This document shows positions 24,609 through 38,118 of a stretch of 44,021 nucleotides of DNA, one piece after another; position 1 is the first letter of the stretch; each line of letters begins with the position of its first letter. Origin of the DNA: Mustelus asterias (Eukaryota). The notes under the pieces are model-generated. The model was not told where the DNA came from, did no database searches, and saw only the letters and a program-made list of their open reading frames with translations. Made by a program: the position numbers and the translations under genes. The stretch is taken from the NCBI RefSeq assembly GCF_964213995.1, contig NW_027592658.1, positions 1 through 44,021 of the forward strand. Reading direction: 5' to 3'.

Positions 24609-24802
24609 TCATGCGGAACTCGATGATCTGAGGCTGGATCTCATTTGGAGCAGGGACAGGTTCCGGCTCAGCACCTTGGGCCAGACGCAGGAACTGATGC
24701 CAAGCACTGTGCCCAGTGCTCCCACTGCCACGCCCCCGACTAATACACCAAGCTGGCTGGAATCCAGAATGCTTTCCTCCCAGGAATCTGGCATCTCCGG
24801 CT
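24609..24802 (-). CDS. WA: CP/TM/cytoplasmic exon of the MHC class II alpha-like (W-category alpha) chain
   Basis: Acceptor tgtgctcctttgacag; phase 1 joins ...AYW to EPEMPDSWEESILDSSQLGVLVGGVAVGALGTVLGISSCVWPKVLSRNLSLLQMRSSLRSSSSA-stop. W-EPE.P junction and GxxxGxxGxxxG are class II alpha motifs. Confidence 0.88.
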
Positions 24803-24904
24803 CTGTCAAAGGAGCACAAGGTTATTGGAGACACAACCAGAAATCAGTCCCGTTCTAATCCACCCGGCGCCCACAGCATTTCTCATGCGGTTTTGCTGTC
24901 ACGG

Positions 24905-25022
24905 TGAGAAGTCTCACAACACCAGCTTAAAGTCCAACAGCTGTATCTGGTAGCAAAAACCACAAGCTTTCAGAGCCCTGCTCCTTCGTCAGGTGAGTCA
25001 CTCACCTGATGAAGGGGCAGCA
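24905..25022 (-). mobile_element. Short Penelope pLTR-derived fragment with a hammerhead motif and inverted junction
   Basis: caacaccagcttaaagtccaacag...ctccttcgtcaggtgagt-c-actcacctgatgaaggggcag; homologous to 13379-13470. Confidence 0.8.
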
Positions 25023-25026
25023 AGAT

Positions 25027-26023
25027 CCCTATAACCTCCTCCAGCCCCTAAACCCCTTCCTATCTCTGTAACCTCCTCCAGCCCCTAAACCCCTTCCTAT
25101 CTCTGTAACCTCCTCCAGCCCCTACACCCCTTCTTATCTCTGTAACCTCCTCCAGCCCCTACACCCCTTCTTATCTCTGTAACCTCCTCCAGCCCCTAAA
25201 CCCCTTCCTATCCCTATAACCTCCTCCAGCCCCTAAACCCCTTCCTATCTCTGTAACCTCCTCCAGCCCCTACACCCCTCCCTATCTCTGTAACCTCCTC
25301 CAGCCCCTACACCCCTTCCTATCCCTATAACCTCCTCCAGCCCCTAAACCCCTTCCTATCTCTGTAACCTCCTCCAGCCCCTACACCCCTCCCTATCTCT
25401 TTAACCTCATACAGTTCCTACACCCCTCCCTATCTCTGTAATCTCCTACAGTCCCTACAACCCTCCCTCTCTCTGTAACCTCCTACAGCCCCTACAACCC
25501 TCCCTTTCTCTGTAACCTCCTCCAACCCCTACACCCCTTCCTATCTCAGTAACCTCCTCCAGCCCCTACACCCCTTCCTATCTCTGTAACCTCCTCCAGC
25601 CCCTACACCCCTTCCTATCTCTGTAACCTCCTCCAGCCCCTACACCCCTCCCTATCTCTTTAACCTCATACAGTTCCTACACCCCTCCCTATCTCTGTAA
25701 TCTCCTACAGTCCCTACAACCCTCCCCCTCTCTGTAACCTCCTACAGCCCCTACAACCCTCCCTTTCTCTGTAACCTCCTCCAACCCCTACACCCCTTCC
25801 TATCTCTGTAACCTCCTCCAGCCCCTACACCCCTTCCTATCTCTGTAACCTCCTCCAGCCCCTACACCCCTTCCTATCTCTGTAACCTCCTCCAGCCCCT
25901 ACACCCCTCCCTATCTCTTTAACCTCATACAGTTCCTACACCCCTCCCTATCTCTTTAACCTCATACAGTCCCTACAACCCTCCCTCTCTCTGTAACCTC
26001 CTCCAACCCCTACACCTCTCCCT
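25027..26023. repeat. 37-bp C-rich minisatellite, about 27 copies
   Basis: Unit tatctctgtaacctcctccagcccctacaccccttcc, with variant blocks that are themselves duplicated. Confidence 0.96.
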
Positions 26024-26435
26024 AATACTGTAATTGAGTGTCTTTAAGACAGAGATAGATAGGTTCTTGATTAATAAGGGGATCGGGGTTGTGGGGAAAA
26101 GGGAGGAGAATGGGGATGAGAAACGCATCAGCCATGATGCAATAGCAGAGTAGACTCAATGGGCCGAATGGTCTAACTCTGCTCCTATGTCTTATGGTCT
26201 TTTGGGCAACCCTGTCTGTGCCTCTCATCATTTTATCGACTTCTATCAGGTCTCTGTCAGCCTCCGCTGCTCCAGAGAAAACAACCCTAGTTTGTCCAGC
26301 CTCTCCTTATAGTCCATACCCTCCAATCCAGGCAGCATCCTGGAAAACCTCTCCTGCACCCTCTCCGAATCCTTCCCGAATGACGCCATGGGACCCTTGC
26401 ACAATGTAACGGATAAACATTACGGTCTCTCTTAC

Positions 26436-26717
26436 CCCAGTACGCCACCTTCACCTCCTTACTGACGGTGTGCAGGACTCGGCAGGAGTACGTGTCCCCA
26501 GCTTCAGGTCGGATATGCGCACGGCGGACAAATTCAAAGCGCCAATTCTCACCATGCCAGAACCTGGAGGAGTTTGCGTCAGTGTGGAGGGGCGCTCCAT
26601 TGACCTGTAGAGTGATGGCGATTGTCGGAGGGAAGACCCCACTCACCAGACAGCTCAGAATGTTTGCCTCGCCGTAGGTGACCTCTTTCTCTGGGAACAG
26701 GAGAAGGTCGGCCATTT
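26436..26717 (-). CDS. WA: alpha2 Ig-C1 exon with beta-2-microglobulin-like features (W-category alpha chain)
   Basis: Acceptor acatcacatttcag, donor TGG G|gtaag, 282 nt, phase 1-1: EMADLLLFPEKEVTYGEANILSCLVSGVFPPTIAITLQVNGAPLHTDANSSRFWHGENWRFEFVRRAHIRPEAGDTYSCRVLHTVSKEVKVAYW. Confidence 0.92.
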
Positions 26718-35414: not shown

Positions 35415-35532
35415 CTGGCAGCATGTTAGGAGAGAAAAGAGCTGACGTTCCGAGTCCAGATGACCCTTTGTCAAAGCTTTGACATCTGGACTCGAAACGT
35501 CAGCTCTTTTCTCTCCTTACAGATGCTGCCAG
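35415..35532. repeat. Palindromic element built from two inverted hammerhead-like modules
   Basis: Arms aggagagaaaagagctgacgtt / aacgtcagctcttttctctcct around the perfect palindrome tgtcaaagctttgaca (35469-35484). Confidence 0.8.
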
Positions 35533-36012
35533 ACCCGCTGAGGTTTTCCAGCATTTCCTCTTTTGGTTGCAGATTTCAGCATCCGCAGTAATTTGCTTTT
35601 ATCCGAGTAAACCTCCTCTGTGCTGCCTCCAATGATAAAATATCTTCCCTTATATAAAGGGACCACATCGGTACACAGTATTGTAAATGTAGCCTCACTA
35701 ATATCTTGTACAGATGCAGCAAGACCTCTTCACTTTAATACTCCTAAAATCCAGCTTTCCATTGGCCTTCCCTATTACTTTCTGCACCTGTGTGCTAGCA
35801 TTCTGACGTTCATGAACAAGGAGTGCCCCGAGTCCTTTGTGCTACAGCTTTCTGCCTCTCTCCATTTAAATAATCCTTCCCAATCTCTCTCCCAAACAAA
35901 CAGTCTCACATTCCCACATTGAATTCCATTTGCCAGTTTCCTGCCTATCAGACGGCGATGGAATGATTGGGACCATGCAGGTGAGAAGTCCCCAATTAAA
36001 CCATGGCAAGGT

Positions 36013-36355
36013 GAGGCGATAGGCTAGTAGTATTATTGCTAGACTATTAATCCAGAAACTCAGCTATTGTTCCGGGGACCCGGGTTCGAATCCCGCCACG
36101 GCAGATGGTGGAATTTAATTTTAATTTTAAAAAATCTGGAATGAAGAATCTACTGATGACCCATTGTGGATTGTCAGAAAAACCCATCTGGTTCCTTCAG
36201 GGAAGGAAATCTGCCGTCCTTACCCGGTCTGGCCTACATGTGACTCCAGAGCCACAGCAATGTGGTTGACTCTCAACTGCCCTCCAAGGGGCAACTAGGG
36301 ATTAGCAATAAATGCTGGGCCCAGCCAGCGATGCCCGTGTCCCACAAAGAGTAAA
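36013..36355 (+). mobile_element. tRNA-derived SINE family B
   Basis: Full copy similar to 9273-9620. Confidence 0.87.
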
Positions 36356-36859
36356 AAAAATCTCGATGAAGACACATCAAAGTCATCAAAGACTTTGCCT
36401 CCGACTTATACAACATCTTTTCCCGAAGGTCGGGGAGTCTAAAACTAGAGGGCATAGGTTTAAGGTGAGAGGGGAGAGATACAAAAGTGTCCACAGGGGC
36501 AATGTTTTCACACAGAGGGTGGTGAGTGTCTGGAACAAGCTGCCAGAGGCAGTAGTAGAGGCGGATATCTTTTAAAAAGCATTCAGACAGTTACATGGGT
36601 ACGATGGGTATAGAGGGACATGGGCCAAATGTTGGCAATTGGGACTAGCTTAGTGGTTAAAAGTGGGCAGCATGGACAAGTTGGGCCGAAGGGCCTGTTT
36701 CCATGCTGTAAACCCCTGACTCTAAAACATCCACATTCTGGAACTGTTCACTGTTAGACAGGCAAACGTGGTCACTCAAATTCCCAGATGGTGGTCAGGA
36801 TAATGTCACCAGAAGGGTAATCCAGAGGCTCAGCGTAATGGGACATGAGTTCAAATTTG

Positions 36860-37217
36860 GGTCAGCACGGTGGCACAGTGGTTAATGCTGCTGCCTCATA
36901 GCGCCAGGGACCCGGGTTCAATTCCCGGCTTGGGTCACTGTCTGTGCGGAGTTCGCACGTTCTACCTGTGTCTGCGTGGGTTTCCTCCGGGTGCTCTGGT
37001 TTCCTCCCACAGTCCAAAGATTTGCAGGTTAGGTGGATTGGCCGTGCTAAATTGTCTCTTAGTGTCCAAAGATGTGTAGGTTAGGTGGATTGGCCATGGT
37101 AAATGGTGTGGGGGTTATGCCAGGGTGATGGGGGGGTGTCTGGGTGATAAGATCTGTCAGAGTCAGTGCAGACTGAATGGAATAAGTGGCCTCCTTCTGC
37201 ACTGTATGGATTCTATG
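36860..37217 (+). mobile_element. HE1-like V-SINE
   Basis: cagcacggtggcacagtgg head, V-domain, CR1-like tail ggcctccttctgcactgtatggattctatg. Confidence 0.87.
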
Positions 37218-37866
37218 GTTCTCTTGATCTCTCTCCATCTCTTGCCCTGTCTNNNNNNNNNNNNNNNNNNNNNNNNNNNNNNNNNNNNNNNNNNNNNNNN
37301 NNNNNNNNNNNNNNNNNNNNNNNNNNNNNNNNNNNNNNNNNNNNNNNNNNNNNNNNNNNNNNNNNNNNNNNNNNNNNNNNNNNNNNNNNNNNNNNNNNNN
37401 NNNNNNNNNNNNNNNNNNNNNNNNNNNNNNNNNNNNNNNNNNNNNNNNNNNNNNNNNNNNNNNNNNNNNNNNNNNNNNNNNNNNNNNNNNNNNNNNNNNN
37501 NNNNNNNNNNNNNNNNNNNNNNNNNNNNNNNNNNNNNNNNNNNNNNNNNNNNNNNNNNNNNNNNNNNNNNNNNNNNNNNNNNNNNNNNNNNNNNNNNNNN
37601 NNNNNNNNNNNNNNNNNNNNNNNNNNNNNNNNNNNNNNNNNNNNNNNNNNNNNNNNNNNNNNNNNNNNNNCGCCCCCACTGCCCCCCTCCCCCGCCAACC
37701 TTGTGCCCCCGGGATGTACAAGTGTTGGGGATGTCCGCCTGCCACCTGGGCAGACACAGGCAGTGAGCATGGGACTGGCACAGCAGCCCTCGGGCACGGC
37801 ATGTCTGGGCATGACGGAGAGGGAATGCTGCCACTGGGGGCCACAGCCCTGGTCTCCCCGACTCAC

Positions 37867-38118
37867 CGTTCGGGGGGTTTGAGAAGTTGGTGGCCACGGC
37901 AGCTAAGGCCATCGTCCGGCGGAGTGAGGCGATGGTCCTGTTGCGATCCCATGCCAGTTCGACAAGAACCCCACGGTATTCATCCAGGCCCTCCTCCAAC
38001 AAATGGATGCTGGTGTCATAATAAATAAAGATGCGGCCGTCAGCCGTGACTTCACACATCATCTCCAGGGGGCTGGGATCGTCCGTGACGTAACAAGCAA
38101 CCAGAACTCTCCATGTGT
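37867..38118 (-). CDS. WA: alpha1 (membrane-distal) exon of the class II alpha-like / W-category alpha chain
   Basis: Acceptor tttctctttgcctttcag, donor AAC G|gtgagt, 252 nt, phase 1-1: TWRVLVACYVTDDPSPLEMMCEVTADGRIFIYYDTSIHLLEEGLDEYRGVLVELAWDRNRTIASLRRTMALAAVATNFSNPPN. Length, the DG....F..D strand motif and the C-terminal NxS..N fit class II alpha1. Confidence 0.85.

What the first reader, a model, noticed from the sequence alone, without database searches (positions are those of the whole stretch)
24609..38118. Hidden three-exon MHC alpha chain: class II architecture with a beta-2-microglobulin-like Ig domain (W-category alpha, divergent)
Seen: three phase-1 exons spread over 13.5 kb of repeats splice into one open alpha1-alpha2-CP/TM/CY frame of about 242 aa. 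The exon layout, W-EPEMP junction and TM motif GVAVGALGTVLG (GxxxGxxGxxxG) are class II alpha-like. Manual alignment of alpha2 to human B2M gives CLVSG/CYVSG (G29), ITLQVNG/VDLLKNG (Leu in place of the canonical C-strand Trp), ENWRF/KDWSF (W60, the class I interface Trp) and DTYSCRVLH/DEYACRVNH. Established: this combination defines W-category MHC alpha chains (Okamura et al. 2021, PNAS), proposed intermediates between class II and class I. Inference: this copy is a mosaic. It has F at B2M Y10, H at F56, F at L54, and class II alpha loop length after the C strand, so it may be a distinct lineage. The category is known; this gene may be unannotated. No leader exon was found in the window.
Basis: partly seen in the sequence, partly recalled or inferred. 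Interest (0 to 1): 0.93.

Follow-up and report, generated by a model that had tools for sequence, protein, structure and literature searches.

The report
Shark W-category MHC alpha-chain gene
This is a real, transcribed gene for the alpha chain of the rare "W-category" of MHC molecules in the starry smooth-hound shark, a close counterpart of the gene in which that category was first described, so it is a sound identification but not a new kind of gene.

Summary
Three minus-strand, phase-1 exons with canonical AG/GT sites encode alpha1 (38118-37867), a C1-set alpha2 (26717-26436) and CP/TM/CY (24802-24609). The N gap (37253-37670) lies inside the alpha1-alpha2 intron, so no reading frame crosses it.

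The gene is already annotated. RefSeq XP_078063910.1 (Mustelus asterias, LOC144489954, named "RLA class II ... DP alpha-1 chain-like") is a leader plus exactly these exons.

Spliced contigs in 2 of 4 runs laid join 26436 to 24802 exactly.

The nearest relative is a Triakis scyllium (banded houndshark) protein, 87-88% identical in each exon. It comes from the species in which Okamura et al. 2021 defined W-category.

The hallmark Trp61 and Leu37 are present, and alpha2 scores beta-2-microglobulin above class II alpha in PDB searches. Phe8 is shared with Triakis. Phe55 and His57 are found only in this copy among 11 elasmobranch sequences.

The "distinct lineage" and "unannotated" readings are not supported. 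A WB-like beta-chain gene lies tail-to-tail at 3508-10722.

This scan's unchecked notes also report two other WA/WB-like pairs and one further WB on other pieces of this genome.

The parts
37867..38118 (-). alpha1 (membrane-distal domain) exon, phase 1 at both ends, 83 full codons
   Evidence: Identical to P0001 residues 39-121. No Pfam family at E<=1. Only shark relatives among 1.84 billion representatives.
26718..37866 (-). intron between alpha1 and alpha2 (11.1 kb). It holds the assembly gap 37253-37670 and a LINE-type retrotransposon (endonuclease and RT ORFs, 31049-33710, minus strand).
   Evidence: gap. (RVT_1 6.9e-39, Exo_endo_phos 3.4e-11).
26436..26717 (-). alpha2 exon: Ig C1-set domain with Leu36 (position 37 of Okamura), Phe52 (55), His54 (57), Trp58 (61), Cys22/Cys78 and an invariant NSS glycan site
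   Evidence: C1-set 1.1e-16; B2M on top; hallmark table; spliced contigs cover 26436-26718.
26552..26553 (-). internal G|GT donor inside alpha2, used by RefSeq isoform X2 (P0003). It drops the second half of the Ig domain, including Trp58 and Cys78.
   Evidence: P0003 goes from ...SSRFWH straight to EPEMPD. Not seen in the contigs listed.
24803..26435 (-). intron between alpha2 and the CP/TM/CY exon, holding a 37-bp tandem array (25025-26024, 27 copies)
   Evidence: skipped by contigs of runs X22 and X1.
24609..24802 (-). connecting peptide / transmembrane / cytoplasmic exon with stop TGA at 24611-24609. TM Gly pattern GxxxGxxGxxxG. The 3' UTR reaches at least 24527.
   Evidence: (X22 contig covers 24527-24802). 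(the four Gly are at least 90% conserved in 11 rows).
38119..44021 (-). part of the intron between the leader exon and alpha1. The leader exon itself is not in the window. The stretch is full of LINE fragments.
   Evidence: (no real leader match).
3508..10722 (+). neighbouring WB-like beta-chain gene, 5'-truncated. Matched stretches: beta2 exon 3508-3781 (Pro57, Lys at 61, no Trp61), CP/TM exon 8477-8590, cytoplasmic exons about 10320-10348, 10477-10585 and 10693-10722. It is tail-to-tail with the alpha gene, with an N gap (20394-20536) between them.
   Evidence: (P0018, partial RefSeq model on the same 48,403-nt contig).

Best explanation
The three exons are the body of a transcribed W-category MHC alpha-chain gene (WA) of Mustelus asterias, RefSeq LOC144489954. 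It is the close counterpart of the banded houndshark (Triakis scyllium) alpha chain.

Inferred mechanism, taken from Okamura et al. 2021 and not tested here: the chain is a type I membrane protein that pairs with a W-category beta chain through class II-type transmembrane glycine packing. Its alpha2 Ig domain contacts the underside of the alpha1/beta1 platform the way beta-2-microglobulin contacts class I, with Trp61 as the central contact. It is most likely a non-classical molecule with an unknown ligand.

In this copy two neighbouring interface positions are changed (Leu55 to Phe, Phe/Tyr57 to His).

Shown here: exon structure, splicing of alpha2 to the TM exon, domain identity, hallmark residues, and nearest relatives. 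Inferred: heterodimer formation, interface geometry and function.
For: - Gene model. P0001 = XP_078063910.1 [Mustelus asterias] is 100% identical over alpha2 and contains all three exon translations in order.
- Splicing. The X22 contig (982 nt, 0 mismatches) lies on 24527-24802 and then directly on 26436-26718. The X1 contig (1086 nt, about 96% identical, another organism) has the same joint. X19 and X21 give unspliced genomic contigs. X22 has depth 0 on the unique intron flank 24820-24903.
- Nearest relative. P0002, Triakis scyllium BBG06243.1/BBO94055.1/BBO94056.1, matches 73/83, 81/93 and 55/63 residues per exon. It groups with the window's exons at 100/99 and 97/93 support.
- W-category criteria from the paper. 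Trp61 and Leu37 are present, as in all 10 of 10 other elasmobranch sequences. Class II alpha architecture and the TM glycine pattern are present.
- B2M-likeness. 58 of the 60 best PDB sequences for alpha2 contain B2M (best stand-alone B2M chain 3e-13). The first class II-type alpha chain is H2-M alpha at 5e-11. With the five-shark alpha2 profile, 59 of the best 60 contain B2M and none is a class II alpha.
- Outside Pfam's class II and class I models. Neither this alpha1 nor 5 WA-like and 3 WB-like relatives match Pfam MHC_II_alpha, MHC_II_beta or MHC_I at E<=1.
- Context. A WB-like gene with Pro57 and no Trp61 in beta2 lies on the same scaffold.
Against: - No tree including B2M, class II alpha, DM alpha and bony-fish WA could be built, because no such sequences could be fetched. 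Placement in the category therefore rests on hallmark residues, HMMER ranking and near-identity to the Triakis deposit.
- I could not confirm that the Triakis accessions are the WA of the paper. Its accession table is in the closed supplement and no paper in the library names them. One source name even reads 'MHC class II beta chain like protein'.
- Three residues the paper calls characteristic are not met: Tyr8 is Phe, Leu55 is Phe, Phe/Tyr57 is His.
- Embedding and fold look-alikes of the Triakis alpha2 do not separate DM alpha (TM 0.88), B2M (0.87) and class II alpha.
- The WB-like neighbour is tail-to-tail, not head-to-head as published pairs are, and an N gap lies between the two genes.
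- The kind of run X22 is not on record, so a processed DNA copy is not formally excluded.
- Against a close relative (X1), the 12 changed codons listed are 9 non-synonymous and 3 synonymous. That shows no sign of strong purifying selection.
Confidence: 0.85

Rival explanations
1. It is an ordinary non-classical class II alpha chain (DM-like or another divergent IIA), and the B2M-like residues are convergent.
For: RefSeq names it a class II DP alpha-like chain. H2-M alpha is the best class II-type PDB hit, at 5e-11. The Atlas structure search of the Triakis alpha2 puts a DM alpha cluster first, at TM 0.88. The exon layout and TM glycines are class II alpha-like.
Against: Position 37 is Leu, where class II alpha is said to be invariably Trp (paper). 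Trp61 is present. B2M outranks every class II alpha in both PDB searches. There is no Pfam MHC_II_alpha match at E<=1 in this alpha1 or in 5 relatives.
Confidence: 0.05
2. It is a W-category alpha gene, but a copy under relaxed constraint that may no longer form the class I-type interface: expressed but drifting.
For: His57 and Phe55 are unique among 11 elasmobranch sequences. Five of the 12 alpha2 differences from Triakis fall in residues 52-62 around Trp58 (post hoc hypergeometric p 0.005). Alpha2 has 7 Mustelus-derived changes against 2 Triakis-derived, and its tip branch is 0.12 against 0.02. Against run X1 there are 9 non-synonymous and 3 synonymous changed codons. RefSeq isoform X2 truncates the Ig domain.
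Against: The frame is intact, all splice sites are canonical, and both Cys, Trp61, Leu37 and the NSS site are kept. It is transcribed and correctly spliced. The 7 against 2 asymmetry is not significant (p 0.18), and over all three exons the counts are 11 against 12. Only 15 coding differences, among the 18 listed in these exons out of the 22 counted in the X1 contig, could be classified.
Confidence: 0.15
3. It is a paralogue, not the strict orthologue, of the published Triakis WA. M. asterias holds several WA/WB pairs and another copy may be closer to the Triakis gene.
For: This scan's unchecked notes list two other head-to-head WA/WB-like pairs and one further WB on other pieces of the genome. 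A second WB-type protein of M. asterias (P0019, 79% identical in beta2) sits on another contig. The paper reports three presumable pairs in great white shark.
Against: The two protein searches returned no other M. asterias WA. Identity to Triakis is 87-88% in all three exons, in the range expected for confamilial species. That expectation is my judgement and was not tested.
Confidence: 0.25

Closest known systems
W-category alpha chain (WA) of banded houndshark, Triakis scyllium (Okamura et al. 2021, PMC8713811); taken here to be P0002 = BBG06243.1/BBO94055.1/BBO94056.1
   Same: Same domain order and exon junctions. 88/87/87% identity in the alpha1/alpha2/TM exons. Trp61, Leu37, Phe8, the NSS site, both Cys and the TM GxxxGxxGxxxG are shared.
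   Different: Position 55 is Phe where Triakis has Leu, and position 57 is His where Triakis has Tyr. There are 12 alpha2 differences, 5 of them in residues 52-62. The RefSeq leader is 16 residues longer (279 against 263 aa). The link between these accessions and the paper's WA is inferred, because the supplement is closed.
Beta-2-microglobulin (class I light chain)
   Same: The alpha2 domain scores B2M chains best in PDB. Leu sits at the Ig core Trp position and Trp at the class I interface position in HMMER's alignment.
   Different: B2M is a free single-domain protein. Here the domain sits between an alpha1 platform half and a transmembrane anchor. Residues 55 and 57 differ from the conserved Leu and Phe of B2M as given in the paper.
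Classical and non-classical MHC class II alpha chains (including DM alpha)
   Same: One exon per domain, phase 1, alpha1 - C1-set alpha2 - CP/TM/CY, and the alpha-type TM glycine pattern (passage of PMC13399432 seen).
   Different: No Trp at position 37, Trp at 61, and no Pfam MHC_II_alpha match. The Cys that PMC13399432 places three residues before the first Gly of the string (CxxGxxxGxxGxxxG) is Leu here.
WA-like genes of other elasmobranchs (Scyliorhinus, Heterodontus, Chiloscyllium, Hemiscyllium, Stegostoma, Heptranchias, Pristis), annotated in RefSeq under class II alpha or 'beta-2-microglobulin-like' names
   Same: Same architecture. Trp61 and Leu37 in 10 of 10, Phe/Tyr57 in 10 of 10.
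   Different: 41-62% identical in alpha2. Those sequences have Tyr8 (9 of 10) and Leu/Ala/Ile at 55. Alpha1 is 3 residues longer in the rows outside Triakidae (sequences, read by eye).

Membership tests
W-category MHC alpha chain (WA), Okamura et al. 2021 | Class II alpha-type architecture: leader, membrane-distal alpha1, Ig C1-set alpha2, CP/TM/CY, one exon per extracellular domain | tested here: met
   The leader is seen only in the RefSeq protein, not in the window.
W-category MHC alpha chain (WA), Okamura et al. 2021 | Trp at position 61 of alpha2 (the residue the category is named after) | tested here: met
   Trp58 of the exon translation aligns with the B2M interface Trp. It is present in 10 of 10 other elasmobranch rows.
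W-category MHC alpha chain (WA), Okamura et al. 2021 | Phe or Leu instead of the Ig-superfamily Trp at position 37 | tested here: met
   Leu36.
W-category MHC alpha chain (WA), Okamura et al. 2021 | Characteristic (not invariant) interface residue Leu55 | tested here: not met
   Phe here. Among 10 relatives: Leu in 6, Ala in 3, Ile in 1. The family itself varies at this site, so I do not treat it as defining.
W-category MHC alpha chain (WA), Okamura et al. 2021 | Characteristic interface residue Phe/Tyr57 | tested here: not met
   His here, against Phe or Tyr in 10 of 10 relatives. The letters are backed by a 0-mismatch contig in X22 and in X19. This is the one real departure from the family pattern. 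Membership rests on descent (the clade with Triakis) and on positions 37 and 61.
W-category MHC alpha chain (WA), Okamura et al. 2021 | Characteristic Tyr8 (partner of Pro57 of the beta2 domain) | tested here: not met
   Phe here and in Triakis; Tyr in the other 9.
W-category MHC alpha chain (WA), Okamura et al. 2021 | Alpha2 clusters with B2M, apart from class II alpha2, in trees | tested here: inconclusive
   No tree was possible, because no B2M or IIA sequences could be fetched. As a proxy, B2M fills 58 of 60 and 59 of 60 top PDB ranks. The Atlas look-alikes do not discriminate.
W-category MHC alpha chain (WA), Okamura et al. 2021 | Paired, head-to-head WB gene | tested here: inconclusive
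   The 5' end of the gene and anything beyond it lie outside the window. The WB-like gene in the window is tail-to-tail.
W-category MHC alpha chain (WA), Okamura et al. 2021 | Forms a heterodimer with WB at the cell surface | not testable with these tools
   Shown in the paper only for tiger salamander chains.
Conventional MHC class II alpha chain | Invariant Trp at position 37 of alpha2, and no conserved Trp61 (as stated in the paper) | tested here: not met
   Leu at 37, Trp at 61.
Conventional MHC class II alpha chain | Alpha1 recognised by Pfam MHC_II_alpha (PF00993) | tested here: not met
   No family at E<=1 for this alpha1 exon or in 5 full-length relatives.

The most novel reading that the evidence does not exclude
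In Mustelus asterias the B2M-type contact surface of the W-category alpha2 domain has been remodelled. Phe55 and His57 are unique to this copy, and 5 of the 12 differences from Triakis are packed around Trp61. This could reflect co-evolution with a particular WB partner (the neighbouring beta2 has Lys, not Gly, at position 61) or a changed, possibly pH-sensitive, interdomain contact. If so, the 'class I-type interface' of this category would still be evolving within one shark family.
Probability: 0.15. Interest if true: 0.45.

Novelty: new member of a known kind. Interest (0 to 1): 0.3.

Why it matters
W-category molecules are the proposed intermediate between MHC class II and class I. In the searched library, only three immunology papers mention them.

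Each further verified, expressed copy helps to separate truly constrained residues from merely common ones. Here Trp61 and Leu37 are kept in 11 of 11 elasmobranch sequences. Positions 8, 55 and 57 are the ones this copy changes.

The case also shows that genome pipelines give these genes generic class II or 'beta-2-microglobulin-like' names, so the family is easy to overlook in annotation.

The gene itself is an expected counterpart of a published one. It opens no new question on its own.

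Tried and rejected
- Alpha1 against PDB by sequence. Only weak, non-significant matches, all four MHC ones to class I alpha1 domains (E 0.14-0.81). This is suggestive of the class I-like features the paper describes, but it is not evidence.
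- Word-indexed search with the five-shark alpha2 profile, set up so that both B2M-sized and full-length chains were eligible. It gave 10 hits among 557 candidates, all elasmobranch WA-like, with no B2M and no class II alpha. The planned tree therefore had no outgroups. The trees hold only elasmobranch WA rows: 11 for alpha2 and 10 for alpha1. P0013 was left out of the alpha1 tree because it lacks that domain. P0004, P0003 and P0001 were left out as duplicates or isoforms.
- Faster alpha2 evolution in Mustelus. 7 against 2 derived changes, p 0.18, with 3 sites ambiguous; over all exons 11 against 12. Rejected as a finding and kept as a hint. A stray p value printed was for the wrong counts and is not used.
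- ESM Atlas on the Triakis alpha2. DM alpha, B2M and class II alpha clusters all came out near TM 0.85-0.88 and cosine 0.93-0.95. It does not discriminate.
- RNA runs. No listed holder is on record as RNA. The evidence for transcription is the spliced contigs.
- Tools that gave nothing. The look-up of encoding contigs and structure prediction were closed, so the remaining 4.4 kb of the scaffold, the second WB contig and any structure model were out of reach. The protein-atlas search could not read the window's own alpha2.
- Supplements of PMC8713811 (accession table, Datasets S1-S3) are closed. They would settle whether P0002 is the published WA and give the reference alignment.
- Papers, and how much of each I saw. 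PMC8713811: outline, all four parts of Results and Discussion, Data Availability, and found passages; no figures or supplements. PMC13399432: found passages only. PMC12619710 and the Mustelus genome papers: search listing only.
- 'Not in print' claims rest.

Full report
THE OBSERVATION

On the minus strand there are three exons with canonical splice sites.
- Alpha1: 38118-37867.
- Alpha2: 26717-26436.
- CP/TM/CY: 24802-24609, ending in TGA.

Each is open in phase 1 and gives 83, 93 and 63 codons.

The window has two N runs, 20394-20536 and 37253-37670. The second starts 197 nt downstream of the alpha1 donor and lies wholly in the alpha1-alpha2 intron. No reading frame depends on it. Only the order and orientation of the two flanks do.

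IS IT A GENE?

Alpha2 is a C1-set Ig domain (Pfam, E 1.1e-16). Alpha1 and the TM exon match no Pfam family at E<=1.

A word-indexed protein search with the alpha2 exon returned three proteins among 5 candidates. The exon was given as the stop-free ORF 26290-26853 and scored over residues 47-139.
- P0001 = XP_078063910.1, 'RLA class II histocompatibility antigen, DP alpha-1 chain-like isoform X1 [Mustelus asterias]', 279 aa, 100% identical.
- P0003 = XP_078063911.1, isoform X2 of LOC144489954.
- P0002, 263 aa, Triakis scyllium, accessions BBG06243.1/BBO94055.1/BBO94056.1, 87% identical.

P0001 reads as a 38-residue leader followed by exactly the three exon translations, with the split codons Asp, Glu and Glu at the joints (tblastn). 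The gene is annotated, under a generic class II name.

The leader exon is not in the window. tblastn at E<=10 found nothing. Of the leader's 7-residue words, the only match was one low-complexity Leu-run word on the opposite (+) strand, which I take as chance.

TRANSCRIPTS

No run on record as RNA holds the stretch. I laid four runs on 24400-26900.
- Run X22 is from the same study as the DNA holders and its kind is not on record. It has a 982-nt contig lying on 24527-24802 and then directly on 26436-26718, with no mismatch. Its depth is 0 on the unique intron flank 24820-24903.
- Run X1 is from another organism, and RNA is only a guess for it. It has a 1086-nt contig with the same joint and 22 mismatches.
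- Runs X19 and X21 give unspliced genomic contigs across both exon borders.

So 2 of the 4 runs laid show the alpha2-to-TM joint exactly as predicted. The one extra base at 26718 is the shared G of the acceptor and the alpha1 exon end.

The X22 contig goes on for 423 nt 5' of alpha2. That length fits alpha1 plus leader plus a short UTR, but I did not see those letters. The alpha1-alpha2 joint therefore rests on the RefSeq model and on the Triakis protein, both of which have it at that place.

WHAT KIND OF MHC CHAIN?

I read all of Results and Discussion of Okamura et al. 2021 (PMC8713811). W-category chains have class II architecture. WA alpha2 is marked by:
- Trp61, the residue that gives the category its name;
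- Phe or Leu in place of the Ig core Trp at position 37;
- Leu55, Phe/Tyr57 and Tyr8.

WA alpha2 clusters with B2M in trees, and WA and WB genes lie head-to-head.

In this gene, position 37 is Leu and position 61 is Trp.

Against PDB sequences, 58 of the best 60 matches of alpha2 contain B2M (best stand-alone B2M chain E 3e-13). The other two are H2-M alpha (5e-11) and an IgA heavy chain. With a profile of five shark alpha2 domains (A1), 59 of the best 60 contain B2M and none is a class II alpha.

Alpha1 has very few relatives. Among 1.84 billion representatives, 6 proteins reach E<=0.001.
- Three are shark chains of the same kind: Scyliorhinus torazame, Heterodontus francisci and Chiloscyllium plagiosum.
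- Three are long proteins (1361-3692 aa) with 6-7 matched stretches each, which I take as spurious.

None of 5 WA-like and 3 WB-like full-length relatives matches Pfam MHC_II_alpha, MHC_II_beta or MHC_I at E<=1.

IS IT A DISTINCT LINEAGE?

No. The profile search found 10 proteins among 557 candidates, all elasmobranch.

The hallmark table covers 10 sequences besides this gene.

| Position | The 10 other sequences | This gene |
|---|---|---|
| 61 | Trp in 10 | Trp |
| 37 | Leu in 10 | Leu |
| 57 | Phe or Tyr in 10 | His |
| 8 | Tyr in 9, Phe in Triakis | Phe |
| 55 | Leu in 6, Ala in 3, Ile in 1 | Phe |

Identity to Triakis is 73/83, 81/93 and 55/63 for the three exons. In trees of the elasmobranch rows, the window's alpha2 and alpha1 each pair with Triakis (100/99 and 97/93).

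What is special to this copy is Phe55 and His57. In addition, 5 of the 12 alpha2 differences from Triakis lie in residues 52-62 (p 0.005, but the window was chosen after looking).

Alpha2 has 7 Mustelus-derived changes against 2 Triakis-derived, with 3 ambiguous (p 0.18). Over the three exons the counts are 11 against 12.

Against run X1, 15 of the listed differences are coding (18 listed in these exons, of the 22 counted in the contig). They change 12 codons, 9 of them non-synonymously. These numbers are too small to separate relaxed constraint from adaptive change.

SURROUNDINGS

On the plus strand there is a beta2-type C1-set exon at 3508-3781. It directly follows a 69-bp satellite array (102-3469, 48.7 copies). 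Downstream lie a CP/TM exon (8477-8590) and three short cytoplasmic exons up to about 10722.

RefSeq has this as a partial protein on the same contig: P0018, 'SMH class II histocompatibility antigen, beta-1 chain-like, partial'. A full-length paralogue, P0019, sits on a 114-kb contig.

Counting back from the TFQ motif, its beta2 has Pro at 57 and Lys at 61. It therefore lacks the Trp61 that conventional class II beta is said always to carry, and it has the Pro57 of WB and class I alpha3 (paper). The numbering is my own count against the paper's description.

This WB-like gene is tail-to-tail with the alpha gene, about 13.9 kb away, with an N gap between them. It is therefore probably not the head-to-head partner. 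That partner, if there is one, lies beyond the right end of the window.

The introns are inflated by a LINE with endonuclease and RT ORFs (31049-33710), by LINE fragments, and by a 37-bp array (25025-26024).

Unchecked notes of this scan report two other head-to-head WA/WB-like pairs and one more WB on other pieces of this genome. That fits the multigene picture in the paper, and it is why I give the strict-orthologue reading only about three chances in four.

HOW IT MOST LIKELY WORKS

This part is inferred from the paper, not tested here. The product would be a type I membrane glycoprotein that pairs with a WB chain. Pairing would use the class II-type TM glycine motif (GxxxGxxGxxxG here; the passage of PMC13399432 seen says the W-category alpha TMD carries this string). 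The alpha2 domain would dock under the platform through Trp61, as B2M does in class I.

The paper says the W-category subgroups lack the full sets of peptide-contact residues and the polymorphism of classical molecules. A non-classical role with unknown ligand is therefore the best guess.

LIMITS

- No tree with B2M, class II alpha or DM could be built.
- The paper's supplements are closed, so the link between the Triakis accessions and the published WA is an inference. No paper in the library names those accessions or the RefSeq ids.
- 'W-category' occurs in 4 papers of the library, one of them unrelated.

VERDICT

This is a correct and well-read detection of a known kind of gene. It is already modelled in RefSeq and is a close counterpart of the founding member. 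It carries two unusual interface substitutions that are worth a note, not a headline.

Noticed in passing
window 3508-10722 (+): A 5'-truncated WB-like beta-chain gene (beta2, CP/TM and three cytoplasmic exons). Its beta2 has Pro57 and Lys61. RefSeq models it as a partial protein. A 69-bp satellite array (102-3469) sits where the beta1-beta2 intron should be, and no beta1 or leader exon is in the window.
   Followed up: partly
window 26552-26553 (-): RefSeq isoform X2 (P0003) uses a GT inside the alpha2 exon as donor and keeps the frame. It removes the second half of the Ig domain, including Trp61 and the second Cys. It was not seen among the contigs listed by read laying.
   Followed up: partly
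window 102-3469, 12287-13378, 15778-16707: The same 69/70-bp satellite occurs as three arrays. The two smaller ones flank a 579-aa RT-bearing ORF (13707-15446, +; Pfam RVT_1 4.6e-10). Its C-terminal part looks to me, from memory only, like a GIY-YIG endonuclease as in Penelope-like elements. That was not tested.
   Followed up: partly
window 31049-33710 (-): A LINE-type retrotransposon with endonuclease and reverse transcriptase ORFs sits inside the alpha1-alpha2 intron, in the same orientation as the gene. Many LINE 3' fragments lie elsewhere in the window on both strands.
   Followed up: partly
window 37868-38116 (-), alpha1: A Cys pair (Cys8 and Cys21 of the exon translation) is shared with Triakis, S. 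torazame, Heterodontus, Stegostoma and C. punctatum, but is absent in Heptranchias and Pristis (sequences, read by eye). Triakidae alpha1 is 3 residues shorter after the YYD motif.
   Followed up: no
window 24400-26900, run X1: A related organism (coded A) expresses or holds the same spliced form at about 96% identity. At position 55 it has Val where M. asterias has Phe and Triakis has Leu, so this interface site differs in all three.
   Followed up: partly
window 17376-18404 and 19868-20225: Tandem arrays of 46-50-bp units lie next to the N gap at 20394-20536, between the two MHC genes. The gap may sit in such an array.
   Followed up: no
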